Shown here one piece after another: positions 6,730 to 57,236 of a stretch of DNA of 64,000 nt; position 1 is the first letter of the stretch; every line of letters begins with the position of its first letter. Below the pieces are notes generated by a model. That model ran no database searches and was not told the DNA's origin. It was given only the letters and a program-made list of their open reading frames with translations. The stretch covers positions 434,001 through 498,000 of the forward strand of contig NW_026858036.1 in NCBI RefSeq assembly GCF_026571515.1, given 5' to 3'. Made by a program: the position numbers and the translations under genes. This DNA is from Ruditapes philippinarum. Taxonomy: Eukaryota.

Positions 6730-9294
6730 ATGAAGCAGAAAATGGACAGTTCCCTGGTGAATGAAACATCTTATCTAATTGTAGACAAGGAACTTAGAGA
6801 TAATGGGTAAATGCATTATATTTAAAACAAATACAGATGAGCACTCTGCATGCAGAATTATATGAATTCATTTTCATTAAAAACTGATACTTAAAAGGAA
6901 TATGTATTAGTGTTAAAAAGATAACAAAAACGTAATTGCAATTTTTTTTTCTTTGTATGATATCTTAAGAGTTTACTAGGTTCTAGATAAACAAAAATGA
7001 GTGCCTGTAACATTTATATTTTTTATCAGAGTTCACCGAAATCCATCCAGAGAAAGGAAACTGTTTCTTTTGGTATCATGTATAATACAACAACTCATTT
7101 TTGCCGGCATAGGCTACGGACTGAGTGTAATGTATGCAGAACTTATCATAGTGTTTGAAGCAAAGAGATCTGAAACTGCCCTAATACAAAGTATATTCAT
7201 GGCTATAGCAACAGGCGGCGGTAAGGTTATATACATAAGTATAAACTATTGATTACGACAAAAACGGAACATCCGTTCATCCATCTATCTAAAAAAAAAC
7301 AGACACAATTTTTATTTTCTAGACTTATGCACATTTTCATCGTCTTTATGACATGCAATGAACACCGTACAACATAATTACTTCAAGATATGTATGTCGC
7401 GTGTAAATATACAGCCTCAACTTTCAAAGAGGATAAACTACAGTTGAGCATCATAGGTCTTACATTTAAAAAAGATTGTTTGCAATTTTTTTAATTAATT
7501 CTTTTTACTTCCTAACATTTTGTGTAGCCACATATTTCAGAACCATATCCAAAAATAAAGAAAAAAAACTTGTATAATGTTCACATATATTATTACATGT
7601 ATGATATAGCAAATTTATCTGCAATTACATTTTTCACGGACTCGGTGTGATGTAAGCCAAACCTGTATTTTACTTTCATAAAGCGCATAAATACAATGTC
7701 ATATGTTTTTTAAATTAATAAAATATTTTACAGGGATATTATTTACCGGAGTTATAACTAAAATAGGACCTGGAAATAGTATGATTATTGGTGGAACTGT
7801 TGGTTGTATCGGACTGTTTTTGAGTTCTTTCAGTAAGGGATTAACTGCAATAATTTTATGTACCGGTGTACTTTCTGGTAAGTAAAATGTTACTGATTCC
7901 GAAATCAAATGTGTTTAAAATATTATTGCACATTCTTAATTGTGATCTTAAGATGTAATTTTAGAACATAGATTCGGCATTAAAGGGATACTCAGGCAAA
8001 TTATTGACAAAATATGAAAATAATCTTATGTACTCAAATGACGCTAAAATGACATTTTTCAAAGTCCCAGCATGAATTTCTGTATAAATTCTTTATATTT
8101 TGCGTTTGAAGCGTAAATATATCTATACTTGTTGGACATAATTAAGACGCCGACAAAATCACCGCGTTGTATTAAAACAAGTCATGTAACTTGCACAAAA
8201 TCTGGGAGCTACAGTAACATATATTGTGGATATTGTATGATTGAAACAAGTCTAAATCACTCATTTGACATGTCCTTTAACGTTTCTAGAGTTCACTGTG
8301 ACAACTATTGTGAAATCTCAAAATCTAACCTGACCCGCGTGGGTCAGGTTAGGAAACCGCCATTTTATTCTTAATACGAAGAAAAGTTTTGTTCCTGTGA
8401 CTGCTTAGTGCATTTATTTTGAGGACATTTACAGAATAATGAATGAAAAATTCAAAACGAAGAAATAAAAATTTTGCCTCTTTCCATTTCAGAAAACAAT
8501 CAAAGTCTTTGACACGACTTAATTGAAGCATTTGTTCACATAATTACATGGTTTATTAAATTATTACATTTTGAGCTGCAAACGCACTACCACATTTCTA
8601 ACTGGCAAGCATTAAATATTTCTATCCAATGTAATTATGATTAAAAAAAACAAATGTAACTGAATATCAAAATGTTATGACGGTTGTATTAAAATAGATG
8701 TTTTTATCATATTGATTTCAAAGTGCAAATTAACTGCTATTTTAAAACGATATTTTCAGCTCTTGGGATGTGTATGTGTTACCTGGCTGCCTTTATAGCC
8801 GTAAGTCGGATGTTCCATGAAAATGCTGGACCCTATCTTGTTATACTCTCTCTCGGTTCAAGTATTGGACAGTTTGTAGTTCCTATGTTCTACGAAATGT
8901 TCATTGAGCAGTATACTTGGTCGGGAGCATTCATTCTGATGTCAGGAATAGCTTTACAAAATGTACCGTTCGGTGTTATTGTGCATTATTCTAAACGGTT
9001 TTATAAATCAAATGAAGAAACAGGGAAGTCTACAGTGGCAACTTTATGTGATTTTTCAGTTTTAAAAGATTGGCTTATGTGGGTTGTATATATTAATTTT
9101 CATTTGCTTGCATTAACAGGTAATTTCATCATTCATTATAAAATATATGATTGGTCGTTAAAAATATTTATAAGCTATCGACTAAAATGAATTCTCATAA
9201 TGTGTTATGTATAAATAACTAGCCCATCATGTGAAATATAACGAAACACACATTTGTATAAAAGTATTTTACTAAGTAACTGACAAACTAAATC

Positions 9295-20874: not shown

Positions 20875-23800
20875 TTAATCAAATGATTTATACTGTGCAC
20901 ATTGTGAATCATATGTAATAAAACACCTTCTCTCCTTGTCTCGTTTTCTCAACACATAGACAATAATTATAAAACCAAATGTTACTAGAACAGATACAAC
21001 AATTCCAAGCTCATATGCAATGTCATATTCTCCGTAGGAATCTCTTAAACTACCTGGAATATAAGTAAACTCGGAGGTTTAACTCAATAGAAATTACTAA
21101 ATAACTCAATGGAAAGTTATTCTGAAGGATTAAATTTTCAGTTGCTTGAAATAACAGAAGGAATAAATTTTCAGTAGCTTGAAATAACAGGTACAAATTG
21201 TTAAACAGAGTCAGCCTGGATATACTTTTGTTTGAAAAATTTGTTAACAGTCGACAGATTATTACAATGTCTTTCATAAACACTAGGACAAAATACTACA
21301 AGACAGTCTGAAGGACAGTTAAATCCCCTTCGCAGCGTAAATAATGTGCACTTCTTCACCTATAACCAACCATGACGCTAATGTTGTACCATTCATACCA
21401 TAAGCACATTTGCTCATCACAAATTGACCGATTACCATCCATATTTAGAAGGTAGATACCTTTGTAGATCCTCTTATTTTGTTTGAAATTTGAGGTTAAG
21501 GTCTTGGTAACCATGGGTATTTTGGACTTCACATATTGACAAGTTTCTTGCATATTTGGTTGTATCAGGCTTTAGTTTTATATTAACTAACAATACTTTG
21601 ATTGTGACTCTATTGTATTATTTGTTATTGTTCTCATGTTTTACAAATCATTCAAGTGAGAATTACAAGACTGCTTGTTATATTATAACCTTGATCTTGG
21701 GAATAGCCAACTGGTTGCCCTCTGTAGGTTATGATGGTGATCATGTGAGCCAATATTATTAAGAAAATTCATTAGTTTAAAACTTATTAAGAACATACAA
21801 AATTTAAACATTTGACCATTATGTTTGACCTAGACCTTGGGTATAACAACCTGAAAGTGCTCTTTTCAGTAAATCAAAAGTAAATAAAAAGTTAAGGAGC
21901 GGACAGGAAAATATGGACTCTATCATTTGACTTTTAAGTGTGACCTTGACCTTAGTGTAAGCATACCTGATGTAACTTTGGGGTAGTAACCTAGATGCTG
22001 TGCTCTGCAGATTGTATCATGGTGGTAATCATTTGTGCCAAGTAATTTTAAATCTTTTCATTGAGCGGACATGAAAAATAGATGTTTAAACATTAAACCC
22101 ATGAGTGTGACCCTGACCTTGATTGTAATGACTTGATAGTGGTGCTCTGCACATGTTTGTCATAACGGATGATCACTAGTGTGCCAAGTTATTATAAAAC
22201 TAGAACTCCGCGAGTCGGATGTGTCGCCTTGTGAACAATGTAGTTTAGGGGAAATGGCCAGGACAAAAATGAAATATGAAAAATAACAAAGGGCAATAAC
22301 TAAAAAAATAATAAGTGCAGATCAGCAGTTTCTGTACACTGCACTTCTTATCAATAAGATCTATCATTCTATGATGTTTCAAGTCCATAGCTTTCATACT
22401 TGAGGAGAAATGACCAGGACAAAAATAAAGTAAGAAAATCAACAAAGGGCAATAACTCAAAAATAAGAAATGCAGAGTATCAGTTCTTATGCACTGCACT
22501 TCTTTTTAATGAGATCTATCATCCTATGAAGTTTCAAGTCCATAACTTTTATACTTTCGGAGAAATGGCCTGGACAAAAATTAGGTATGAAAATTAACAA
22601 AGGGCCATAACTCAAAAATTAAGAAATGCAGAGTACCGATTCTTGTGCACTGCACTTCTTAATAATGAGATCTATCATCCTATGAAGTTTCAAGTCCATA
22701 GCTTTTATACTTAAGGAGAAATGGCCCGGACAAAATTAAAGTATGAAAATAAACAAAGGGCAATAACTCAAAAAATAAGAAATGCAGAGTACCAGTTCTT
22801 GTGTACTGCACTTCTTCTTAATGAGACCTATCATCCTATGAAGTTTCAAGTCCATAGCTTTTTTAGTTGAAGAGAAATGGCCCGGACAAAATTAAAGTAT
22901 GAAAATTAACAAAGGGCAATAACTCAAAAATAAGAACTGCAGAGTACCGGTCCTTGTGCACTGCACTTCGGGTTATTGAAAGAAGCATGCATACCAAGTT
23001 TGAAGTAAATCAGACTTATAGTGACTGAGTTATGCTCCGGACAAGCTTTAAGGGACGCCGACGCCGACAACGACAACGACGCCGACACAGACGCCGCCGC
23101 CGCCGACACCGCCGACAAAAGTAACCCCTATATGTCACCTTTTCAAGGCGACACAAAAATAAGCAGTTTAAAAGTTATTAAGCAGATACGAAAGTGTTAC
23201 GGACTGACGGACTGAAGGAAAGACGGACTGACAGACGGAGGCCATTGCTATAATCCCCTTCTTCCTTTGTGGAAGGTGGTTTAAAATATAAAAATATATC
23301 TATCAACCAAAATTAACAAAAAACGGTAAGTTATTTAACTTTCGAAATAGCTTGAATTCAAAAATAATACTAGTAATGAAGAATTATACAGAATAATGAA
23401 AAGTAGTATCTTACCTCCTACAAAATTGCTTATCAGAGTTCCTGTCCCTAGAGCCAAGTTTTGTTGTAAAACTGCTTGTTGAAACATATCATTGTCTACT
23501 AAATCGTACATAATGACCGGTAAAAAGACATTAATAAGGCCAAATGCGACACCATACACTGTACAAGCAGCATACATCCAATTGTGAAGTGTCTGTAGTA
23601 ATATGAACAAAGCATGCCCTACTGCCAGAATAGGACAGACGTAAAACATGTAATATACGGCTGGAAATGAATGTTTTCTCATTTTCACCATTATACCTAT
23701 TATACGCCCTACAAGATTTGCAAATCCTAACACAGACAGTAATGATGTTGCAAAGTTTTTAGTATAACCTCTAGACGTCATCTGATCTACAAGGAACCAT

Positions 23801-26800
23801 ATCTCAAAGGTCGCTGGAGAAAAAAAAATAAACATAACGAAAAATAATAAGTCTAAAAATATAACTTTTACCAGACAATTTACTTGTAATAATATTTTTC
23901 CAACTAAAAAGACTCTAATATTTGCCTCAGAAAAATTCATGTTTAAGATTGGATATGAATAAGTTCTTAAAAGAGCTTATTTCCTGATCCGTTGCTAACA
24001 CCTTTTAAAAAAATGGTTTTAAACAACTGCTATATACCTGTGGTTTCAATAAGAACGATAATAGTTAGGTACAGCCAAATCACTGGATCCTTGTTCAGCC
24101 TTTTGTGAACTTTTACTTTTACTTCTGACTCCTCTCCATTCATCAGAAGTTCCTTTGAGTAATGAATAAAAAGTCCACAAGGCAGCCCTTGGAGAGCAAT
24201 ACCAGCTAGAATAATGAAAGTCCCAGACCAGTGATAGTAGTTAAGAAGACCTCCATAGACCTGTGATAATACCATATGTCCTAAACTCCCTGCAACTGTC
24301 AGCAAGGCTATCGGTAACCCTGCATCTATTTTGTATAACGAACCTACCACTGCAAACGGTGCCATATAGCCAATGGAAAGACCAATACCTAAATGTTTTT
24401 TTTAATACAAAACTATTTTGTTAATGTAATTGTATTGTTTTGATTACAATTTCCGTGCATATTGAACAAGAATCTTCATTTTCTAATGTTTAAATAATTG
24501 AACACAAAACAATCAGCGATTATTATTTTCACTTTTCTAGCAAATCACTTTCATCGTTAATACAATATAATCTTGTTGATATTGGCTAAATCGATTTAAA
24601 TTTTCGAAAGAAAAAAAAACAAACAAACAAAAAAAAAACAAAAAAAACCAACAACATTAAAACAAATTTCTTGAATCATTAACACATGTTATTAGCAATA
24701 GTTTAACGATAGTTTTTATTGGTTAAATATTTTACCAGAAACTAGTCCCGTTGAAAATATGATTGTTTCAGAATTACGAGCTAATGAACTTGCGGCAAAT
24801 CCAACACATGAGAGTACCGCGCCACAAGACATTGACAAACCAAGTCCTAGATGTCGGATAGGCCATGTCCACAATAAACCTTGAACATATAATATAACTC
24901 TAAATCGAATAGTTATATATGTTTTGATATCACAAATGCAAAGAAAAATGAATCTCTTAAGAATGCCAAAAGAACAAATAGGAGAAGAAAAAACAAAAAC
25001 ATCCCGCAAATACATTGAAATGTCATAATGGTCTTTAGCGTTTTTTGAAAAATTTCGTCGCAAACAAGGATCGTGTAAAAATCAGATATTTTTTGACAAT
25101 TAAATGCTGTAAGTACACACGATTTCTAATACCAGAAAAAACTGTATTTTCAACTTAAATTACTTTCGGAACCATTTTCCAAAGAAAAAAGAAAGAGATT
25201 CCGTGAAAATTGACAGATATTCGGTGAAACTATTAACAAGAGGTCGACCGTATAGAGGTACGATACTTTATTCAAAAATTATTACTTAAGGAACATATTT
25301 CATATTAAGGAGTTATTTGTTACTTCCAATGCCAACGTTAACATGACATACATATTAAAAGAATATCCCTCTAGAGTCCAATGTAGCAGATATGCCACAC
25401 AACCTAAATCATATATATACTCGTATATATATTTTTTATGTTAAGAACAATCCTTTCAAATGTTATGTTAAAACTATCCTTCATATGCAGTGGTGGACTT
25501 ACACAGTTACTTACCCTTTAGTAAAAACACGCCATTTGTACAATTGAAAAAGAAGTCAAAATGGCCTCACAAATATAAAATTTTAACAGGTGTTGTATTA
25601 TCTGTTTGTTGTTTTCATAAAATTTAAGAATTTATCTATGCATCTGCTGATGAGTTTTACTATAGAAAAATCAGAAATGCTCTATACATAGCAAATATGC
25701 TTCTTAGGGCTATAATAGTTTGCCACGCAACTTTAGCACATATTTTATTTCCAGTAATAAACCGAAGTATCATTACATATACTAAGGACTGAGATACTAT
25801 TTCTTATTTATAATATATTGTAGTGTTTTTTTTATAGTTTTTTAATAATTTTGAAATAGAGATTTCACCGAATACTTTGATGGCAAAAAATGCAATCCTT
25901 AGATATAACAGAATTAAGTAAAATCGTCTGCTATTGTTATATGATCCAGCTAGATATACATTTCACCCACTTCATTAATTATTTCTAGTCCGTTCGTATT
26001 GAAGTACATTATATTACGTTCAAATATCACTAAAATTCATTTTTTTGAATTATTTTATGACCCCAAAGTACGGTCGTTTGTCTGATGTTACAAATTGCAC
26101 ATATATCTGTGTAACGCACTATGGTGTCCAATATTGACCTCAAAGTACATAAAGCACTTTGGGTTCGGATCCCATATTAGGTAAGGTACTGTTGGGTCGG
26201 ACCCCAAAGTGCGTTGGACCCCAACGTGCGGTGTTGATACATGTTTGTATTGTTTTATATGCCATGTATGCATATCTCGTCTTTAAATGATCAGCAGTTC
26301 CCCACTGATATCCGTGAGCCTAACCAGGCGCTTTACTGTTGGCTGACTTAAAGGCCCATTATGCAGAAGAAATGCTTGTATGTCTATTTCTTAAAATCTT
26401 TTTATTTTTGGTGTTTTGTTATAGTTCAAGAAAAGTCACTCATTTTCAATTTTAGTGGATAATACTTTGCCTCTTTTACCCTTGGCAATACGTAAATTGA
26501 TTAATTAATTAATTAGCTTATTTATTTAAAGATTTTAGCAATTCCATCATCTTATCTAGTGATATGTAACTACAATATTTAAGCAAAGATTTAAGCACTT
26601 GATCTCGTTTCATATCTTGTGTGAACTTGTTTTTTTCTTTTATTATAGATTGGTTTTTTTTTCTTATAAAATTGATAATGAAAATTTGTTAATAAAAAAT
26701 GAAGATAAGTAAGTTTTATTTACTTATTTTGACATAAGTTTTCCATAGCATTGTATCTTTTTTGTAGCAGATCTGCTACAATTTCATGAAAGTCCACCGT

Positions 26801-45142: not shown

Positions 45143-45518
45143 GTAAGAATAGGGATCTATGTTTCCTCACAATTTCGTGTGCTGTATTGAATTTCACATG
45201 CAATTGTTATATAGTAGTAACTTTTTATCACAATGAAATATAAATTATCTTTATATGATACAATGTGTTAGTAGAGTATGGTTTATGTATATGATGAACA
45301 GTCGTTTGTTGCATACTATCTGATTCTCATTTTTCCTGTTATTTTGAAGTACGACGAACAAGAATAACTATATTTTTTCAACGCGGTTTGTGATTTGTTA
45401 CGTCAATCATTAATAATGTTTACAGATACTTGTTTAATTTTACAGATAAATCTGATCATATTTAATCGCAAGCAAACTTTACATGTTGATATATTCATAT
45501 TTTTATTAATATTTTCTC

Positions 45519-48500
45519 ATGATTTTTACAATGCAGGACAACATCATGGCACGCAACCGACTTCAAGATATAGATGTTATTAAGGTAAGCGCACCAGTGA
45601 AATGTTTTCCACGGTATCAGTACATGCTAAAGATGAGGAAAGATTTGGCCAAGCGGTATAACTGTTTGATGGAGAAATATGAATGTGACCCACTTAAAGA
45701 CGATCTCAGTGACGAAAATGTATGCATATTTATGTGCAAATCTAAGAAATCGAAAGAACCCTTTATCGACATAGAATTGATTGTTTCACCAAGACATCAG
45801 GACTCTGTTACTAAAAGAGAGTACCAAGCTGAAAATGAAAATGAATTGAAATCAGTCAAAGGCGCTTACTTCATATTTTTAGGAGATGAAGATACTTTGA
45901 CAATTTCAAAAGATTTCCATGAACGTACTATTGTGATAGGAAAAGATAAAGAGTCGGAATACATTCTTACACAGATATTAGGTAGTAAGGAAAGAATTGG
46001 TGATTGTTTATATGATGATTTATTCAAAGCTTTGTCAATCCATTTAGAAAGGTTTGCTTTGACTGGAATGAGGAGTGCATGTGAAAATTTGTATTCTGTT
46101 CTTACAGACAACGACGTGGCAGGTAATAAGTATATCTCGATAAATTAAGTAAAAAGAGATGATTTACAGGGTAATATTTACGTACCTCGGAGTCTTTATC
46201 AACATATCTGTTATGTATGTTGAATTGTTTTCAATCTAAACTGCAAATTTGGATTTATAAGGTTTTTTTGGTCACATTTGAAGAATAGTACGATGCAAAC
46301 GAAAATAACTAGGCAGGCAATGTTTAAGAGTCATTGTTTTTCAGAGTTTAAGAAGCGTTACGTACACAATGCAAGAACAGAACGCTAATATCCAATAAGT
46401 CCAAATGATTTCTACATTATGTTCATGCAAGTAAAAAGTGCATCAGCGCTATTCTATATGTCTGACTGGATAAGTTTATGATTCATTCTTTGTCATAAAA
46501 ACATGGCGACTTGAGTTTAAACAGAAGATAAAAGTAGATATCTATGCTATAATAAGCTTTGAATCCTGTTTTCGTTAATTTCCGTTACACGTTTAAACTA
46601 TTAATTGAAAAAAATAAAGATTTTGTTTTCTTTTCAGGCGAGCTTTCCTTGAATTCTCGAAGTACCGAGTCAACGAAACAACGACCTAAATCAGACGGAG
46701 TCGACAGTATTTTTTTTTAATTTTTATACAATTATTTTGCTGCAAAGCAGACGAGTCTTTTTTTTAATTTTTATACAATTATTTTGCTGCAAAGCAGCCG
46801 AGTCTTTCATGATTTTGAAAAAGACGCATGATTTACTGTCGAATGACGCGATTTTTTGCGGATCGTCAATAAAAAAACAAGTACATATAAACATTCGCAT
46901 ATCAGTTTTACACTTCAGGACCAAATTCAAATTTCTGGCTTTGTTGCAAAACATTTTAAGTTATATTTTCTTCAAATGGAAATACTATGTTTTCTTATCT
47001 CCATATACAAATAATGGACTGTCTGTATTTTACCGAGATTTAATATCGTGAAACCAGGCTGAAATTAAATCAACGTAAATTCCTTGTCTCTACCTATGGG
47101 GGAACTGTTTCGCACATGGATTAACACATCGTTGTAAGAGCTGTTGTGCTGCGCTTTCATAAAACATCTGCCTTTCTAATCATTTGTTGTCTTTAAGAAA
47201 ATAGGAAACATGTTCATTTTGGAGAAATTTACATTTCATTGAAGTTTTGTATTCTTCCTTTCAGATGATTTGGTTTCAAAACCTTAAATATTATAGTCGT
47301 CTTTTACATAGTAAAGCGAGGTCACATGTTTTATTTTGGTTAAATTTGGTAACGGGTCTGATGCCTTTCATGTCTTATATACTACGTTTATGCTCAAATT
47401 TGATGTTGTAATTAATAAATGTTCAAGACATTATGATAAACCATTACGTGCAACACTGTCTATATATAATTACGACACACGGTGTCGGATTCCTGGCACA
47501 TAACGACATTAACTGAAACCTATCCGTCCTGACATGTTATAAAAAGAGTACGGGCGTAATGGAATGTTCGTGTCGTAACGCTTTCCCTTAAATTTCAACA
47601 ATTGCGCAGATCTAAACAGTCATCCGTTTGGGTAGCACTTTACCCGGCTCTTCTAAATGTTTGCAGTGTACAGTTGACCATGTCTTCCCAGCCATTCAAT
47701 GCGTGCGTAAAACAGCGCTTGTTCCCAATATTAATAACTCCTAAAAGGATAACATAAACCAATATTTTATATATATATATTTTAATAGAGTTATTCATTA
47801 CTGCATGATTAATGTATTTACGATATTTCAGTTAAAGCTAATTCAGCGGAACGAACACCCCGACCACAGTCTGAAGACATTAAACAATCATTAGAAGTTA
47901 AAAATAGTCAAGGTAAATTATTTTTTGTTTGGTTTACGTCGAACTAACATTTTAAAAGTCTACATGGTGACAACCTGCCAAAACTGGTAGAGCAAGGGAT
48001 CAGCTACATCACTGCATTATTTGCAGCTGAGTAGAACCATTGACATTTTGTGAGCTAGATGGATAGCTTCCTAACACAAAAATAATCAAATTCCCTAGCA
48101 TGATTCGAAATCGCAGTGGTGAAGTGCTAGTGATTCGTTGTCAACGACCCTTACCACTCGGCTAAGGATACTACAAAGTTATTGAACTAGACCGAATCTT
48201 AAGTTATCAATCATACATTCTAAGCTGTATATAAGGGTGCATAAGAAAGTGTGCTAGAATTTGTTTTGCGGGAGAGCATTACCGAAAGACTATCTTAAAG
48301 GTATGATGTTCGACGGTTTTAACCTAAATTTAAGACTTAACAAAGCATCAAACAATCAATAAACACATACATATGTTAAGGTCAGAATGTTATTATTATA
48401 TGGTAGTTATGTCATAAAGATAACGGTTTTCTTCTAACACATACAAATTTAGAAGCAAAGTCGTATTTTAATGCGATCTAAGTCCGACTTTGTGACATTC

Positions 48501-50905
48501 CAACATTTCTTACCTATGCATAAAGTAAGACTGTTTTGATTTCAACAAAGAACGTCACAAGTTTGATTCCTAATTACAAATTCAATCGTTAGGCATTGCA
48601 AAAATTCATGATCTAAATGAAAGTAATTACCATTCGATTATTATCAAGGCGTGTATTTGTTGTTGTTTTCACAACTTTAGTTCTAAAACAATATGTCGAA
48701 AAATGGATCCACTAAATCCAGTGAAACTATCAACTTGCTCTTGTTATGTATGCAACATATTACATGTATATAGTTTGTATCTGGCCAGTTGGTATTTCCA
48801 ATATTATCATTGTTCTATTTTTAGAACATAAACGACATGTATGTACTAGAACGTTCTTAATTGTTGTAGAAAACTCATGCATAATATTTAGATAGAAATT
48901 TCTGGAATGATCTTTATTGTTGAAGTTGCTAGATTATGATTACTGTAGTAAATGGAAGACTATTCTAGAAACTTCTTAGTTAATATATATAAGGAGACAT
49001 TTTTCATTACTCTTATCTTTAAGTCATCAGTTACCTTTTAAGTCATCAGTGATCTTTTAAGTCTTCAGTTACGTTTTAAGTCATCAATATATTTGGAGTA
49101 TTATTCAACTTGGATATTAAGTGATTTATTGGAGCTTGGATTATTTCAAAATAGATTAAATTATTATTGTGGATTTTATTGTGGGAATTTATTCTAAAGT
49201 GTTCTTGGATTTAACTTGGATTTAACTGTGCTATTCAAAAAAGGATCATTCCAGGATCAGACTAGACATTTAAGATTTCATTTTTATTTGGACTTCAGGT
49301 ATTTGTAAACGTAATTTGTTATTTTATTTTTCTTTAATAATTTTTCAACAATAAATTTGTTATTGTTACAAGTTTGTTGCTGGCTTTTCTTTCTCGTTAC
49401 GCCTGGCTCGTAACACTCTTATGACATGGTTGAGCGTTTGAAGGAGTATTTGACACTTGATGACACAAAATGTCAAAAAATGTTGTTATTCGAATGTTTT
49501 ATTTGTCTTAGAAATACAAAGAAAAAAATATTTACTTACATTGTTGAAAAGATTCTATAATTATTGATCTGACGTAAATATAGTATTTTTGGTAAAAATA
49601 AATGGTAACATAAATAAAATAATTCTACAATTTTCTCGTCAAATATGTTTTCAGACAAAAGTCGCAAACGCGGCATTCATGCCAATTTTCCAGATGCAGA
49701 CAAAGAGTTGATAGAACGTCTTCACACTGAATTTGTTGGAATATTTAACAGAAGCATTCTTCCAAACAATGAGAAACCGTGTTTTGCTGAAAACCTGTAC
49801 AAGATTGATAAAACGGTTACTATTTAAATCTGTTACCCCTGTATTTTTAGTAAAGGAGACCTTTTTCAATAGTTGTGAATATTCATAAAAACATTTTTGC
49901 ATCGTACGTTTTGTAGAATGCAACAATGAATTGCTAATTGTTTTTTATCTATATAAATGTACTACAAGTCTGAATAGTTTCCAATAAAAATATTAAAAGT
50001 GTTTTCATATTTGTATATTGTGCTTTGTGTTACAGATGTTGCAGGAGTTAAAGATGATAAGTCATTTGATAAGAAGTTGCGGATATCGCTGGGGTACCTT
50101 TCAGATAAATGTCAACGATGAATACATTTCAGACGATATTAAAAAAGGCATCGATACTTTAATGAAAACACATAACATAACAAAGTACTCTTTAGTTAAA
50201 GTTGGAATAAACCAGTGTTCAACTTGCCATGTAGGTCAGGGAGTAAAAGTTGAATATGGAGCTGGAACTCTTGGGGGGTTCGCTAAAACGTCTTCGGAAG
50301 AATCAGAACGGGCTTGGGCCATACTTTCTAGACATGTTGCTCAAAGAAGTTCTGACAGGAATCTGTACATTGCTAATGACGAGAAAACGTATATTGGAAA
50401 GGTTATGAAAGAAGTTATTGAGGATGAGGCAAATAAACAATACCTTGATATTGCCGCTGCATCATTGCAGCGAGACATATCTTTTGATTCAAGGTATATT
50501 ACTGAAGAGGGGAGTCCTGTTCCAGGAAAACCTTGCGATTATGATACCGATAAGCTTAGAGGTTTGAATGTACACATTAAAGGAGCTACAACGCGACTAG
50601 GTCTTGGTACAATTACTATGCCGGAACAAATTGCAGTGCAAACTGACAATTTGGATGAGAACTATATAATTGTAGAAGACAGACATAAAGGCATTGCTTT
50701 CTGTCAAGCAGGCGATAGTGGGGCGATAGTGTGTGCCGATAATCCTGATAAATATGGAGAGGAAGTCCAGTTAATTTCAATGGTTGTTGGAGAAAATATA
50801 AACAAACCGGCATCACAGCGACAACGTTCATATACTACGGTTAGACTTGATAAGGGTTTAGAGCAGCTGAAATCATTAACAGAAAAAGATTTTCACATGT
50901 GTTAA
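45519..50905 (+). CDS. Uncharacterised ~594-aa protein with C-terminal trypsin-fold (PA clan) serine protease of Nal1/Ssy5/bacterial type
   Basis: Exons 45519-46122, 46638-46706, 47832-47912, 49655-49815, 50036-50905 splice in frame (1785 nt; phases 1,1,1,0). Last exon encodes GAGTLGGF, AILSRHV (His 50333-35), YLDIAAA (Asp 50447-49), VHIKGATTRLGLGTI, FCQAGDSGAIV (Ser 50717-19). The two small middle exons are less certain. Confidence 0.8.
47965..48170 (-). mobile_element. tRNA-derived SINE, degenerate
   Basis: Minus strand: TAGCCGAGTGGTAAGG (A box) .. ATTTCGAATC (B box) followed by a GGAAGCTATCCATCTAGCT..GGTTCTACTCAG body resembling molluscan SINE central domains. Confidence 0.7.
48742..49415 (+). 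mobile_element. Solo LTR (Ty3/Gypsy-like), 674 bp, in an intron of the protease gene
   Basis: TG...CA ends with short inverted termini TGTTATG / CGTAACA, 4-bp TSD CTCT (48738-41, 49416-19), TATATATAAG near 48985, AATAAA near 49350, internal ~20-bp repeat TTTTAAGTCATCAGT x4 (49017-49088). Confidence 0.85.
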
Positions 50906-51324
50906 ATGAACAATGATTGTTTATGTGCATTCATGTGTTTCGGGTGTCCAGTATTTTTAACAGTTTCAAGTTTTAACGTATGTTTGTCTGTAAGTAGTTC
51001 TCCGTTCAGTCAACACACTTTAACCTAGACACTCCATACCTTAAGTATATGTTAAACCTTGTATTAATTTTTACTTTCAACGTTACCAGTTTCCTTATAA
51101 TTTTGGAAGTTATGGTATTATTCTTGTAGTTGTGACGTTTCCGGTTAAAGGGGATGTGGTCTGTGTCAACTTCATTGTATGACATATTGATGTACGAGTA
51201 TGAATGCTTTCATTGATCAAGGATAACAACTTAAGAACAAATAACAAAGTCACGAAACCAGTTGTTGCATAAATATCAGATGAATGCAAATACTGTTGAA
51301 AAACCAACTGCGTACACCACATGT

Positions 51325-54191: not shown

Positions 54192-54932
54192 GATTTCAGA
54201 TTTTATTTTCAATATATGCAAAAGTCCCACAATAGCGGGAAACATAAGCAAATTGTGACATACATAAATGCATACATACAAACATAGAATCACATAACAT
54301 AATGTAGTAGAAAACGGCTATTGAGATTTCCAATAACAGAGCCTAACACATTCATATTTATTTAAGCCATAAAATTGAGCTGGGTATATATATATATGTA
54401 AGTGAAAAGAATAATTATTACAAAATTCAATCATCAAAGACACACAAAAAGAAAAAAGGTCATAAGTTATCTTTCGCATATAGTAATTTAAGACATGATT
54501 TAAAATTGTCTAGTAAAACACATCAAGTTCTAATAAAATGTTGCATTATTTTCATACAAAAAATACTAAGATTCTTTAGTTTATTGGTATTTTCCGATGT
54601 GACCAGGCTTACAAATTTAAACATACTTGGCCTATTTATGTAAAAATTATCTATGTATATTTTTCTATCATTTTCAAATTCTGGACATACAAAAAGATAA
54701 TGAAATTCATCGCCAATATCGTTACATATATTACATTTACGGTCTTGAATAGGTATATTCTGCCATCGTCCTATTTCAATTGGAAGGCGATGATTTCTTG
54801 TCAAAAATAGTAATAATTTATTAGCTAAATTGCTTGGTAGTTTATCTATGTAACAGCTTCTAGAAAAATCCTTTTTGATATATTTGTAAACGTTTGTATC
54901 AGAAGTGTTATTTAGTTCAGAACGCCAATTTT
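54192..54932 (-). mobile_element. 5'-truncated LINE (CR1/L2-group-like) 3' end
   Basis: ORF 54523-55029 contains TRNHRLPIEIGRW..DRKCNICNDIGDEFHYLFVCPEF, the C-terminal Cys/His region after non-LTR reverse transcriptase; 3' tail AATAAAATCTGAAATC on minus near 54192-54210. Confidence 0.85.
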
Positions 54933-57236
54933 GCGAGTAAAAAAGCCTTAATTTGTAGCTATCGCTCAAGTCGAAGTTTTTAATTACTGTAGAACAGCAC
55001 GGATGAACACTTACAAATGCTATTTTCATAGTAACGTAGTAATTTTTACAACCGTTCTTTCAAAAAGATAATGACGTCATCTGTGCGCATTAAAGGTTTC
55101 AGTCGGGTTTTCTGGCATGGATATATACATCGAAATCCAAATCCGATTTGAAACTTTATATTTTATAGTCAGTAAAATGTTTACTACTATAAATTAATAA
55201 GCTCTTTTATTGCTGGTACCTACAATACTTTTTTTAAAGAATTTGATTATTTTTCTTGGGGCGTTTGCTGAAAAAAAGAAAAAAAAAACAACAAAAAAAG
55301 AAAAAAAAAACACAAAAAACACCAGAATATGATAGGCAATTGCATGTTGTTGTTTCGATCAAATTATGACGTACTTTTCATTTAAAATAAAAAAAAAATG
55401 TATGGCTAGGTCGTGCAAATATCTGGCGTCAAACTGGCGCGACGTTACTTTAAATGGTAGCGTTTTAATAATAACCGCACATCAAATAAATAGGAAATTT
55501 CTAATTGACTAAATTTATTAAACTTTTTCGCATAACATTATTGAATTCAATTTAATGAATTCAATATAGAACCTACACTCATTATTGTCTGTTATGTTGT
55601 TCTTTCCATGAACGACCAGATTTAATAAACACAGACTCATCTCATCTGGATGTCACTTTTCGTCTTGTTTATGTTTGACGCGGTTCAAATATGAAGGTTT
55701 CTTTATCAGATTTTTCTTAAAGATGAGTTTAGACTTTTTCTTTGGAAAAGAAAATTTATCAAGCCGTCCGTACCTTTATAACATTTTGTCCTGATGAATG
55801 CGTTTCTTCTTTCTGATAAGGGAATAAGACAATAATTATCGCACAACACTGGCGTAATTTAATGTGAAGACAATACACAAATACTTTCTTTTCTTTCCAT
55901 TCTGCAGCTGACTGGATAAATGGAAAGTATAAAAATGCGCCGTATGTTATCATTGATATTTTATGCGCCATGCGTTATCATTTCCAGGAAATGCAACTAT
56001 TTACAGTGATTGACGAATAATTGCTAGGATGTAGAAGACAATTTAGAATGGCATGCGAAAGAAATATCACTCATAAGATATTTAAATATAAATGCAAAAA
56101 CAATGTATTACTTTATTTATAAAAATATTCTGAAAATACACGTACAGTTTTTGTTTTAGTTGGTTTTCTTAATGTGGATTTTTTTGTACACTTCTTTTTT
56201 TGTATACCGACGCGCATATGAAGGGGAAATAACAACGTGTTGATGAGCTCCTAAATATCATATTATTAGTGCGATACTGAGTCGTTTACAAAACTTTGCA
56301 AATCCTTAAAGAGACCATGAAGTTAGAATAACTAGATATTCCTTACACCTCGATGAATACAAACGTATGCGAAAGGGTATGTTAAACTTCCGTGTTTATA
56401 ATTGACAATTGTAAAACTGGCACGTTACATTGTGTACGTTAGCGATATTGTAACAGTTGAGAGACAAAATGAAAGATATTACTTGCGTTGTCGGCAATCT
56501 TTGTGAATAATATACCCCGGTATACATTATTTTCGTACCTCAACTACGCATTCATTTCCAGCCTGACGTGTTTATTCCATTCGCCCACTGCTTAAACAAA
56601 GTTGGTAAACATGTCATCTGCTGAATGTGCTATTTATACTTATAAATGTCTGTTAGAAAACACATACACGGACTATGGCTATTTGGAACACGGAAAATCC
56701 TGTTACCAACAGAACTGGTCATCATACAAATAGAATAACCCTGCCGTCTTTTGAGCATGATATCAAGGTTCCATAATAAAATGCAATTAAGTTGAAGTCA
56801 TTATGTTATTGATACATTGAATTTTAAATGAAAGAAAAAATTCAATATATGTTGAAAAATATTCACCTTCATGATTGATCTTAACATCGTTATTGTAACT
56901 CCGTTTAACGACGAAATAGATTTTATCCGAAGAGACCGTAATTTTGAAACCTTTAACAATTTACAAAAAATACATATTAAAAGCTTTAAAAGTAAGCAGT
57001 TATGTGGGCCTTACAATACGTCTTGTAAAACAAGGTTTTGTACACATGGGTCATATTATTGTTGTAATATTGTACTTGATGAAACATTAGATAAAAAGGC
57101 ACATCTACTCAGATTACTGCCGATATTTCATCTGATGTTTTCTACGTACCTTAATAAAACAATTCAACCACAAAAGGAAACTTTTAAGTACAATAACCGG
57201 AAGTTGTATCATCTTCAGATCATTCTCCGTCAATTT

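What the first reader, a model, noticed from the sequence alone, without database searches (positions are those of the whole stretch)
50036..50905. Intracellular Nal1/Ssy5/bacterial-type serine protease in an animal genome, encoded on one exon
Seen: intact triad (SRHV, LDIAA, GDSG) with GTLG upstream of the His and KGATTxLxxG between Asp and Ser. It has no signal peptide, no IVGG activation motif and no canonical S1A cysteine pattern (no TAAHC, no GDSGGP). Knowledge: this motif set marks plant Nal1, fungal Ssy5 (S64) and many bacterial trypsin-like peptidases rather than animal trypsins or HtrA. The ~65 aa before it (IRSCGYRWGTFQINV..LMKTHNITKY) could be an alpha-lytic/Nal1-like prodomain. Inference: a poorly described cytosolic signalling protease family of molluscs. 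The single 870-nt exon fits exon shuffling or old horizontal acquisition.
Basis: partly seen in the sequence, partly recalled or inferred. Interest (0 to 1): 0.78.

Follow-up and report, generated by a model that had tools for sequence, protein, structure and literature searches.

The report
Nal1-like serine protease exon, Manila clam
The last exon of an expressed Manila clam gene encodes a complete intracellular serine protease related to the plant enzyme NAL1 and its bacterial and fungal relatives, and clams reuse this exon in dozens of genes, some carrying immune-type domains.

Summary
Window 50036-50905 (+) is one open terminal exon of 289 codons behind a ttacag acceptor. His100, Asp138 and Ser228 (SRHV, LDIAA, GDSG) are kept in all 32 own-genome copies I read.

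All four introns are spliced out in contigs of 4 of 4 runs laid, two of them recorded as RNA-Seq.

The window protein hits no Pfam, NCBIfam or PDB entry on its own. A profile of 57 relatives hits the nine rice NAL1 sequences in the PDB at E 3.8e-11 to 7e-10, with His and Ser aligned to the NAL1 catalytic residues. DegP/HtrA reach only E 0.03 or worse. hhalign to bacterial Nal1-type proteins gives probability 98.5%, E 2.6e-15, with all three triad residues aligned.

The module sits at 44 or more loci in this genome. A phase-0 acceptor lies at the same codon in 26 of 30 copies. In other bivalves it follows STAND NTPase, macro, WWE or DUF4559 domains.

The parts
45537..46122 (+). First coding exon. 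Its start is uncertain between 45535 and 45537. ATG at 45546. It encodes residues 1-192, an N-terminal alpha/beta-looking domain of unknown family.
   Evidence: Spliced contigs start here, with a loose 5' end at 45535 in 3 of 4 runs, and the joint 46119>46635 (+3) is GT..AG. The acceptor cag is at 45534-45536. tblastn of P0165 residues 1-193 is 100% identical. No Pfam or PDB hit.
46638..46706 (+). Exon 2, part of a Ser/Lys/Arg/Asp/Glu-rich linker.
   Evidence: Joints 46119>46635 (+3) and 46706>47832, both GT..AG, in 4 of 4 runs. Linker composition.
47832..47912 (+). Exon 3, linker.
   Evidence: Joints 46706>47832 and 47910>49653 (+2), both GT..AG, in 4 of 4 runs.
49655..49815 (+). Exon 4. It carries the conserved motif ELIERLxxEFVGxFNRSxLPxxEKP just upstream of the protease exon.
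   Evidence: Joints. The motif is shared with P0001, P0004 and P0007 and with the 4 closest paralogues.
50036..50905 (+). Terminal coding exon, 289 codons plus TAA. It holds the whole protease module: a family-specific extension of about 65 aa (CGYR..T.V.V) and a two-barrel catalytic core.
   Evidence: ORF. Joint 49814>50035 (+1) in 4 of 4 runs. NAL1 hits E 3.8e-11. hhalign probability 98.5%.
50264..50278 (+). GTLGG motif upstream of the catalytic His, shared with NAL1 and bacterial Nal1-type proteins.
   Evidence: Aligned to GTLGA of NAL1 and to GTLG, invariant in alignment A5.
50333..50335 (+). Catalytic His100, which is His396 of the 585-aa product.
   Evidence: Invariant in A1, A2 and A3. 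It aligns with the His of NAL1 'RHVA', which is H234 by my residue count on the alignment; the triad numbering comes from PMC12012508 passages.
50447..50449 (+). Catalytic Asp138 (LDIAAA).
   Evidence: At least 90% conserved. Present in 32 of 32 own-genome copies. It aligns with the invariant Asp of the bacterial set. It is not covered by the NAL1 PDB alignment.
50699..50722 (+). F-x3-GDSG block holding the nucleophile Ser228 (50717-50719).
   Evidence: Ser is invariant in A3. It aligns to the Ser of NAL1 'FDLEGDSGS', which is S385 by my count. Phe at -6 is shared with NAL1 and the bacterial set.
50906..51100 (+). 3' UTR. It continues beyond the stretch that was laid.
   Evidence: RNA contigs run uninterrupted from 50035 to 51100, the end of the stretch (table 8).

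Best explanation
Window 45537-50905 (+) is the expressed five-coding-exon gene LOC132751890 of the Manila clam Ruditapes philippinarum. Its last exon encodes, in one piece, a soluble intracellular chymotrypsin-fold serine endopeptidase with triad His100/Asp138/Ser228 (His396/Asp434/Ser524 of the 585-aa product). The protease belongs to the Nal1/Ssy5-like branch of PA-clan proteases. It is too diverged for the Pfam models to see the window protein itself. Shown here: the homology, the conserved triad, the splicing and expression, the soluble character, purifying selection, and the module's reuse as a phase-0 terminal exon at 44 or more loci. Also shown: in other bivalves the same module ends proteins that begin with STAND NTPases or with macro/WWE/KH(PARP14-like)/DUF4559 domains. 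Inferred: the module is the proteolytic output of sensor or adaptor proteins of a bivalve-expanded innate-immunity or conflict-type repertoire. I expect it to be switched on by oligomerisation or by release of an N-terminal inhibitory part. The analogies are NAL1, whose triad is competent only in the hexamer, and Ssy5, which is held by its prodomain (the Ssy5 mechanism is recalled, not checked here). In this gene the sensing part would be the unassigned 192-aa N-terminal domain, joined to the protease by a roughly 100-aa charged linker. The confidence given is for the identity as an expressed Nal1-type protease module; the immune-effector role alone I put at about 0.4.
For: ORF and motifs. Identity to XP_060598082.1. 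GT..AG joints for all 4 introns in 4 of 4 runs laid (X8 and X14 recorded RNA-Seq). Profile A3 against the PDB: the 9 best of 28 sequences are all rice NAL1 (E 3.8e-11 to 7e-10), in two stretches covering GTLG..HVA and F..GDSG. hhalign of A3 against bacterial Nal1_C/NAL1_N proteins: probability 98.5%, E 2.6e-15, 173 columns, with H, D and S aligned. Pfam on relatives: Nal1_C in 5 of 57 and 2 of 63, Peptidase_S64 in 2 of 57 and 2 of 63, Trypsin_2 in 1 of 57 and 2 of 63, and no PF00089. Oyster P0181 hits Nal1_C at 1.2e-4 and S64 at 2.3e-4. The Atlas's own model of P0165 resembles bacterial S1 peptidases (TM by row 0.57-0.63) and a mollusc cluster with 16% Nal1_C. H, D and S are kept in 32 of 32 own-genome copies. 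dN/dS is 0.12-0.65 in 12 paralogue pairs. A conserved in-frame xAG acceptor is present in 26 of 30 copies. Fusions: P0023 nSTAND3; P0045 nSTAND6/AAA_16; P0079 DUF4559 + KH_PARP14 + macro + WWE; P0052 DUF4559. NAL1 needs the hexamer for a competent triad: PMC12012508 passages. Trypsin-like peptidases serve as effectors of bacterial STAND/conflict systems, and bivalves show lineage-specific expansions of immune-type architectures: PMC8195603 passages.
Against: The window protein itself hits no Pfam, NCBIfam or PDB entry, even at E <= 10. The 7-sequence profile A1 also failed against the PDB. The NAL1 link therefore rests on a 57-sequence profile. The NAL1 alignment covers His and Ser but not Asp. 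No 3D model could be made, so triad geometry is untested; the Atlas model has mean pLDDT of only 0.64. No enzymatic, substrate, localisation or immune-challenge data were seen. This gene carries no recognisable immune domain: its N-terminal domain gave nothing in Pfam, the PDB or the Atlas. The immune-effector role is guilt by association with paralogues and with relatives in other species. Six of 32 copies replace the Gly of GDSG by L, S or R, so some members may be impaired.
Confidence: 0.8

Rival explanations
1. It is a catalytically dead pseudo-protease that serves as a binding or scaffold domain.
For: No activity data exist. Six of 32 own-genome copies have L, S or R in place of the first Gly of GDSG. 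The Pfam models fail on the window protein.
Against: His, Asp and Ser are kept in 32 of 32 copies read. His and Ser are invariant in the 57-sequence set and His in the 63-sequence set, where Asp and Ser are at least 90% conserved. This holds despite pairwise identities down to about 20%. The window copy has the full GDSG.
Confidence: 0.07
2. It is a protease of a transposon or virus, multi-copy because the element spreads, and not a host gene module.
For: There are 44 matches in the genome, each on one intron-less ORF. One bacterial relative gives a faint Peptidase_S3 (alphavirus core) hit at E 0.013. A retroelement-like ORF lies 3.6 kb downstream.
Against: The exon is spliced to four upstream exons of a host-type gene in RNA contigs. 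The copies share an intron position, not element ends. They are joined to differing host-type N-terminal domains. dN/dS is below 1 in all 12 pairs. Orthologue-like genes exist in Mercenaria, Mya, Dreissena and Crassostrea.
Confidence: 0.03
3. The family entered bivalves by an old horizontal transfer of a bacterial Nal1-type protease gene and then spread by exon shuffling. This concerns origin and is compatible with the best explanation.
For: The whole module is one intron-less exon. The closest non-bivalve matches seen are bacterial-looking proteins carrying PF25819/PF25608. All named animal hits are bivalves.
Against: The word search could not see plant NAL1 (about 580 aa) or Ssy5-size proteins for a 289-aa query, by the tool's length rule. 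Only the best 150 of 291 hits of the exhaustive search were listed, and most carry no name. Atlas neighbours include Ascomycota clusters too. No tree with plant, fungal and other animal sequences could be built.
Confidence: 0.3
4. It is a secreted digestive or clotting-type S1A trypsin, or an HtrA-type quality-control protease.
For: It has the GDSG motif. Profile hits to DegP/HtrA are weak, E 0.03-1.
Against: There is no signal peptide or membrane segment. There is no PF00089 hit in the window protein or in the 57 + 63 relatives. No PDZ domain is present. NAL1 outscores DegP by 9 orders of magnitude.
Confidence: 0.02

Closest known systems
Plant NARROW LEAF 1 (NAL1) serine protease (PDB 8HAU, 8PME, 8PMG, 8HAS, 7Y77; Pfam Nal1_C PF25819)
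   Same: Both are intracellular, without signal peptide. Both have triad order His-Asp-Ser, a GTLG motif before the His, 'L(S/T)xRHVA' at the His and F-x3-GDSG at the Ser. The profile hit is E 3.8e-11, with the His and Ser columns matching the NAL1 catalytic residues.
   Different: The window protein does not reach the Pfam Nal1_C threshold and gives no hit at all. The host is an animal. The module is a C-terminal exon behind unrelated N-terminal domains. A family-specific extension of about 65 aa stands in place of a demonstrable NAL1_N domain. The hexameric cage and the substrates (TPR2, FZP) are plant-specific, and I made no test of either here.
Bacterial Nal1-type proteases (NAL1_N PF25608 + Nal1_C PF25819 / Peptidase_S64-annotated, about 480-500 aa; e.g. 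Actinomycetota and Luteitalea MAG proteins)
   Same: hhalign probability 98.5%, E 2.6e-15 over 173 columns, with His, Asp (DIAAA against DaAi) and GDSG all aligned. They share the GTLG and F-x3-GDSG signatures.
   Different: Identity is about 22%. The bacterial proteins have a detectable NAL1_N domain and a long C-terminal tail. Their function is also unknown.
Fungal Ssy5 endoprotease (MEROPS S64; Pfam PF08192)
   Same: Some relatives hit PF08192 over its Ser-containing C-terminal part, profile positions about 544-660 of 692 (E 1.2e-6 for P0170, above cut-off; 2.3e-4 for oyster P0181). Atlas neighbours include Ascomycota S64 clusters. Ssy5 is a cytosolic signalling protease controlled by an attached N-terminal part (recalled).
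   Different: The window protein has no PF08192 hit. There is no counterpart of the large Ssy5 prodomain. Autoprocessing was not tested.
Alpha-lytic protease/streptogrisin-type bacterial S1 peptidases with the Pro_Al_protease prodomain
   Same: The Atlas's model of P0165 aligns 278-296 residues to such proteins, with TM by row 0.57-0.63. The aligned range starts upstream of the catalytic core.
   Different: Those enzymes are secreted and disulfide-bonded. No PF02983 or PF00089 sequence hit appears for the clam family. The comparison rests on a model of mean pLDDT 0.64.
Animal trypsin-fold families: S1A trypsins, HtrA, FAM111
   Same: They share the chymotrypsin-fold serine protease core. FAM111 and HtrA are also intracellular (recalled).
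   Different: No S1A or FAM111 chain appears among the 28 PDB sequences at E <= 10, and HtrA/DegP reach only E 0.03-1. There is no PDZ, IVGG, TAAHC or GDSGGP. I do not know whether the PDB copy holds a FAM111 chain, and no FAM111 profile was available, so FAM111 is not formally excluded.

Membership tests
Nal1-like proteases (Pfam Nal1_C PF25819; NAL1 structures) | Scores above the curated Pfam Nal1_C threshold (26.1 bits). | tested here: not met
   The window protein has no hit at E <= 10, and P0165 has none at E <= 0.1. Among relatives, 5 of 57 (best 7.8e-5) and 2 of 63 (best 1.1e-7) hit at E <= 0.01. The own-genome scan with PF25819 hits two other loci, not this one.
Nal1-like proteases (Pfam Nal1_C PF25819; NAL1 structures) | Significant sequence-profile homology to NAL1, with the catalytic His and Ser in register. 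| tested here: met
   Profile A3 against the PDB: 9 NAL1 sequences at E 3.8e-11 to 7e-10. The profile His aligns with the His of RHVA and GDSG with GDSG. By my count on chain 8pn2_A these are residues 236 and 387, which match H234 and S385 of PMC12012508 if the chain carries a 2-residue offset. That offset is my assumption.
Nal1-like proteases (Pfam Nal1_C PF25819; NAL1 structures) | Catalytic Asp in register. | tested here: inconclusive
   It is not covered by the NAL1 alignment. It does align with the invariant Asp of the bacterial Nal1_C/NAL1_N set.
Nal1-like proteases (Pfam Nal1_C PF25819; NAL1 structures) | NAL1_N domain (PF25608) before the catalytic domain. | tested here: inconclusive
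   hhalign of the 65-aa extension against the bacterial N-regions gives E 1.7e-5 with the GTLGG anchor, but E 0.066 and probability 0.8% without it; a reversed control gives 0.32. PF25608 is not among the 20 families matched by the 63 relatives at E <= 0.01.
Nal1-like proteases (Pfam Nal1_C PF25819; NAL1 structures) | Two-barrel fold with an assembled triad; hexameric cage. | not testable with these tools
Only the Atlas's own model was available (pTM 0.58, pLDDT 0.64), and its neighbours are S1-type peptidases.
Ssy5 / MEROPS S64 (Pfam PF08192) | Scores above the PF08192 threshold (23.6 bits) across the catalytic domain. | tested here: not met
   The window protein has no hit. Relatives hit in 2 of 57 and 2 of 63. 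Hits cover only profile positions about 544-660 of 692.
Ssy5 / MEROPS S64 (Pfam PF08192) | Autolytic cleavage of a large inhibitory prodomain. | not testable with these tools
   This needs recombinant wild-type protein compared with a Ser524Ala mutant.
S1A chymotrypsin/trypsin (Pfam PF00089) | PF00089 match, signal peptide, activation N-terminus (IVGG), TAAHC/GDSGGP and conserved disulfides. | tested here: not met
   No PF00089 hit in the window protein or in the 57 + 63 relatives. None of these motifs is in the sequence. The highest hydrophobic window is 0.58.
HtrA/DegP | Trypsin_2-type core plus C-terminal PDZ domain(s); strong profile match. | tested here: not met
   DegP/HtrA reach E 0.028-1.1 and cover only the His-side barrel. 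There is no PDZ hit. The protein ends 61 residues after the Ser.
FAM111 | Homology to the FAM111A/B C-terminal protease domain. | not tested
   No FAM111 sequence or profile was available. None appears among the PDB hits at E <= 10, but I do not know whether a FAM111 chain is in that copy.
Effector domain of STAND/NLR-like immune proteins | The same domain is fused to a STAND NTPase or another immune-type sensor domain. | tested here: met
   This holds for the family, not for this gene. P0023 has nSTAND3 (2.9e-11), P0045 has nSTAND6/AAA_16, and P0079 has three macro stretches + WWE + KH_PARP14 + DUF4559, each with the protease at the C-terminus. The window gene's own N-terminal domain is unassigned.

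The most novel reading that the evidence does not exclude
Bivalves run a lineage-specific intracellular proteolytic signalling or cell-death network. In it, a Nal1-type protease exon, perhaps captured from bacterial conflict systems, plays the part that caspases play in apoptosomes and inflammasomes. It would be recruited as a plug-in C-terminal effector to STAND NTPases, to ADP-ribose readers (macro/WWE) and to novel sensor domains such as the 192-aa N-terminal domain of this gene, and fired by induced oligomerisation.
Probability: 0.25. Interest if true: 0.8.

Novelty: new variant of a known kind. Interest (0 to 1): 0.58.

Why it matters
Nal1-type proteases are known from one crop-yield gene in plants, from the fungal amino-acid sensor protease Ssy5, and from uncharacterised bacterial proteins.

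Five searches of the held library looked for an animal counterpart. They covered Nal1 with Ssy5/FAM111, Nal1 with bivalve, Nal1 with protease and metazoa, the Pfam identifiers, and the LOC/XP identifiers. None returned a paper describing one. The paper supplements were closed and could hold such a listing.

This report shows an expressed family of 44 or more loci in a farmed clam with the catalytic triad conserved. The module is packaged as a reusable terminal exon, and in other bivalve species (Mercenaria and one unnamed source) it is attached to STAND NTPases and to macro/WWE domains.

That gives three things. It gives a concrete candidate for a non-caspase proteolytic effector arm in bivalve innate immunity. 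It gives a clean example of domain shuffling by a phase-0 exon. It gives animal sequences that could help root the Nal1/Ssy5 superfamily.

It also shows that current Pfam models miss most of this family: 0 hits on the window protein, and 5 of 57 and 2 of 63 relatives for Nal1_C.

Tried and rejected
Searches with the window protein alone gave nothing useful. Pfam, NCBIfam and PDB phmmer returned only noise hits: Gly_rich_SFCGS, Gp44-like and NapB.

The first 7-sequence profile A1 against the PDB also gave nothing; the best hit was prephenate dehydrogenase at E 0.88. Only the 57-sequence profile reached NAL1.

There was no Pfam hit at E <= 1 for exon 1. Seven aligned N-domains gave only noise: Mer2, DNA_pol3_chi and the like. 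The PDB profile search gave nothing below E 0.39. Atlas structural neighbours all had TM < 0.4 (DDE transposase, terminase, integrase) and none was a TIR.

The prodomain or NAL1_N identity of the 65-aa extension is not significant once the GTLGG anchor is removed.

PADLOC gave LmuA in 2 of 57 relatives (E 1.7e-4) and three single hits. I did not pursue these.

Scans of the own genome with PF25819 and PF08192 found 2 and 3 weak hits at other loci, none in the window.

I considered contamination by bacterial DNA and rejected it, because of the introns and spliced RNA contigs.

No tree with plant NAL1, fungal Ssy5 or FAM111 could be built, because no tool available here returns those sequences as stored proteins.

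I did not locate the upstream non-coding exon. Doing so would have meant typing the loose-end letters printed by read laying.

The paper supplements were closed and I did not consult them. Those of PMC8195603 may list trypsin-fused metazoan architectures.
Full report
1. The observation.

Window 50036-50905 on the + strand is a single open frame of 289 codons ending in TAA. It lies directly behind a ttacag acceptor. It holds GTLGG (50264-50278), SRHV with His100 (codon 50333-50335), LDIAAA with Asp138 (50447-50449) and AGDSGA with Ser228 (50717-50719).

There is no IVGG, TAAHC or GDSGGP. The full product has no hydrophobic N-terminus or membrane segment; the highest 19-residue Kyte-Doolittle mean is 0.58.

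2. The gene.

A profile search returned a 585-aa protein that is 100% identical over the exon: XP_060598082.1, [quoted passage not shown]. The window is therefore Manila clam DNA.

tblastn of that record onto the window gives five coding blocks. I laid Logan contigs of four runs on 45400-51100. Two runs (X8, X14) are recorded as RNA-Seq and two (X1, X5) are guessed to be RNA. All four GT..AG joints appear in 4 of 4 runs: 46119>46635 (+3), 46706>47832, 47910>49653 (+2) and 49814>50035 (+1).

The coding exons are therefore 45546-46122, 46638-46706, 47832-47912, 49655-49815 and 50036-50905. They sum to 1755 nt, which is 585 codons.

A loose 5' end at 45535 appears in 3 of 4 runs, and cag ends at 45536. 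This shows that a non-coding exon further upstream is spliced on.

These runs are contigs. They show presence and splicing, not expression level.

Each exon was searched apart, and the full-length sequence I used is the database's own record, called by its id.

3. What the exon encodes.

Alone, the 289-aa product matches nothing in Pfam, NCBIfam or the PDB.

The word-indexed search found 7 relatives, in Ruditapes, Mercenaria and unnamed contigs, at 36-65% identity. In their alignment His100, Asp138 and Ser228 are invariant.

The exhaustive HMMER search with that profile found 291 cluster representatives at E <= 1e-3, of which 160 reach <= 1e-10 and 41 reach <= 1e-30. Only the best 150 were listed.

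I built a profile of 57 domain-only relatives (A3). In it His100, Gly191 and G226-D-S-G229 are invariant, and Asp138 is at least 90% conserved. This profile hits 28 PDB sequences at E <= 10:
- The nine best are all rice NARROW LEAF 1, at E 3.8e-11 to 7e-10.
- DegP-like proteases follow at E 0.028-0.06.
- HtrA1, SplE and the rest are at 0.09 or worse.
- No S1A trypsin is listed.

The NAL1 alignment has two stretches. One pairs the profile's GTLGgF...L.skHVA with NAL1 GTLGAIVK...FLTNRHVA. The other pairs F...GDSGaiv with NAL1 FDLEGDSGSLI.

By my count on chain 8pn2_A, the aligned His and Ser are residues 236 and 387. These are H234 and S385 of the published triad (H234, D291, S385; passages of PMC12012508) if that chain has a two-residue N-terminal offset. 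The offset is my assumption. The Asp region is not covered by that alignment.

hhalign of A3 against seven bacterial-looking proteins that carry Nal1_C and/or NAL1_N (A5) gives probability 98.5% and E 2.6e-15 over 173 columns. GTLG/His, DIAAA/Asp and GDSG/Ser are all in register. The relatives of A5 include MAG proteins of Actinomycetota and Luteitalea.

Single-sequence Pfam scans of relatives give only PA-clan families repeatedly. Among the 57 they give Nal1_C in 5, Peptidase_S64 in 2 and Trypsin_2 in 1. Among 63 longer relatives each of the three is hit by 2. An oyster protein (P0181, Crassostrea gigas LOC105320676) hits Nal1_C at 1.2e-4 and S64 at 2.3e-4.

The ESM Atlas holds P0165. Its own model has pTM 0.58 and pLDDT 0.64. 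That model is nearest to mollusc clusters, to a mollusc cluster of 238 members with 16% Nal1_C, and to bacterial S1 peptidases with alpha-lytic prodomains (TM by row 0.57-0.63). By language-model features the neighbours are mollusc, Ascomycota (some S64) and bacterial Nal1_C clusters.

Together this places the domain in the Nal1/Ssy5-like branch of chymotrypsin-fold serine proteases, outside S1A and HtrA. The window protein fails the Pfam thresholds of Nal1_C and S64. I therefore file it as a diverged relative, not a member by those models.

4. The 65 residues before the core.

This stretch (LIRSCGYRWGTFQINV...HNITKY) is conserved within the family: CGYR..T..V.V in A1 to A3.

hhalign against the N-regions of 40 bacterial relatives gives E 1.7e-5 if the shared GTLGG is left on. 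With it removed the result is only E 0.066, probability 0.8%, against 0.32 for a reversed control.

The Atlas structural rows for alpha-lytic-type proteins align 278-296 residues starting upstream of the core. The question stays open.

5. A reused exon.

Searching the 1.4-Gb assembly with the exon product gives 44 matches, the window's own copy included. Five of the 44 have internal stops. Most full-length matches lie in open frames of about 300 aa.

I read 32 of these loci, the window's own copy included:
- All 32 keep His, Asp and Ser.
- 26 have GDSG, and 6 have L, S or R in place of the first Gly.
- In 26 of the 30 that could be anchored, an in-frame xAG codon lies exactly where the window exon has its acceptor. 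That is 16 codons before the Gly of CGYR, usually behind a pyrimidine-rich run.
- Two more are one codon off, two have none, and two could not be anchored.
- Nei-Gojobori dN/dS for 12 paralogue pairs is 0.12-0.65. This indicates purifying but not tight selection.

The N-terminal domain of this gene (exon 1) and the exon-4 motif each occur only 5 times in the genome. Each copy sits beside one of the 5 closest protease copies. One such copy lies in tandem just beyond the window's end, at C6523:499419-503471.

In other relatives the same C-terminal module follows different domains:
- nSTAND3/AAA_14 in P0023 (Mercenaria).
- nSTAND6/AAA_16/ATPase_2 in P0045 (Mercenaria).
- DUF4559 in P0052.
- DUF4559 + KH_PARP14 + macro (3 stretches) + WWE in P0079, which is unnamed.

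One search also lists single hits to HEPN_DZIP3 and NHL. This is what exon shuffling of a phase-0 terminal exon would produce.

6. Distribution.

Of 30 clusters looked up, 19 carried organism names, and all 19 are bivalves: Ruditapes, Mercenaria, Mya arenaria and Dreissena polymorpha. One search adds Crassostrea/Magallana gigas.

The word search cannot see proteins longer than 1.75 times the query. So "bivalves only" is not shown, and neither horizontal nor vertical origin could be tested.

7. The N-terminal domain.

Seven aligned N-domains (A4) give no Pfam hit better than E 0.033 and no PDB hit better than E 0.39. Atlas structural neighbours of residues 1-195 are all below TM 0.4 and of RNase-H-like kinds, and none is a TIR.

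Without a model it is not excluded either.

8. How it most likely works.

Shown: this is an expressed, soluble, multi-domain protein whose C-terminal exon is a Nal1-type serine protease with an intact and conserved triad.

Inferred: it is an active endopeptidase that serves as the output of a sensor or adaptor N-terminal part.

Two analogies guide the mechanism. In NAL1 the triad is competent only in the assembled hexamer (PMC12012508 passages). In Ssy5 an attached N-terminal part holds the catalytic domain until a signal removes it (recalled, not read here).

Trypsin-like peptidases are recurrent effectors of bacterial STAND and ternary conflict systems. Bivalves show large lineage-specific expansions of immune-type architectures (PMC8195603 passages).

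The fusions make induced-proximity activation in an immune or stress pathway the most likely logic for the family. For this particular gene that is association, not evidence.

9. Novelty.

RefSeq calls the gene uncharacterised. Five searches of the held library returned no paper describing an animal Nal1/Ssy5-type protease:
- Nal1 + serine protease + Ssy5 + FAM111: 0 papers.
- Pfam names and accession numbers: 3 papers, two fungal and one bacterial.
- Nal1 + bivalve: 2 irrelevant papers.
- Nal1 + protease + metazoa: 1 irrelevant paper.
- Six LOC/XP identifiers: 0 papers.

A sixth, looser search (Nal1 with any mollusc or invertebrate term) listed 10 of 12,645 papers, and none of the 10 mentions Nal1. 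The supplements were closed.

Automatic resources already tag a minority of mollusc members with Nal1_C. The kind of enzyme is therefore known. The animal family, its modular exon and its fusion partners are what is new.

Limits: I made no 3D model of my own. There is no tree with plant and fungal members, no activity data and no immune-challenge data.

Noticed in passing
window 54523-55029 (-): A 168-aa ORF with a Cys/His-rich tail (…RKCNICN…GDEFHYLFVCPEF…). From memory it looks like the C-terminal end of a non-LTR retrotransposon ORF2. It lies 3.6 kb downstream of the gene.
   Followed up: no
window 8723-9190 (+) and 23335-23940 (-): Two long hydrophobic ORFs of 155 and 201 aa. They look like exons of multi-pass membrane transporters, on opposite strands.
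   Followed up: no
window 48650-49420 (intron 3 of the gene): Contig depth is very high here in the runs laid (up to 244 in X5 and 127 in X1), with loose ends at 48742 and 49415. This is probably a repeat or a separately transcribed element inside the intron.
   Followed up: no
window 45546-46122 and 50036-50905: Differences between the assembly and the run contigs are mostly amino-acid changing. In the protease exon 4 of 5 change the residue (W19C, K36R, C61Y, A93T; R146 silent). In exon 1, 7 of 11 do. This suggests high protein polymorphism, or contigs drawn from near-identical copies.
   Followed up: partly
G000:C6523:499419-503471 (just beyond the window's end); also C9687:167686-173910 and C183:41810-51300, 89888-101410: Four paralogues have the same N-domain + exon-4 motif + protease architecture, and one is in tandem on the same strand. 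Their N-domain matches contain 1-2 stop codons, which may be introns or may mean broken genes.
   Followed up: partly
L009-L012, L020, L037 (G000:C14970, C10302, C3853): A subgroup of six copies has LDSG, SDSG or RDSG instead of GDSG. The Gly that would help form the oxyanion hole is replaced, while His, Asp and Ser are kept.
   Followed up: partly
window 49655-49815 (exon 4): The motif ELIERLxxEFVGxFNRSxLPxxEKP directly precedes the protease exon. A weaker form (RS..P..E.P) is in the consensus of the 63 longer relatives. It could be a regulatory or cleavage segment that travels with the module.
   Followed up: partly
alignment A3 (relatives, not the window protein): Two of 57 relatives hit the PADLOC model LmuA (Lamassu) at best E 1.7e-4.
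   Followed up: no
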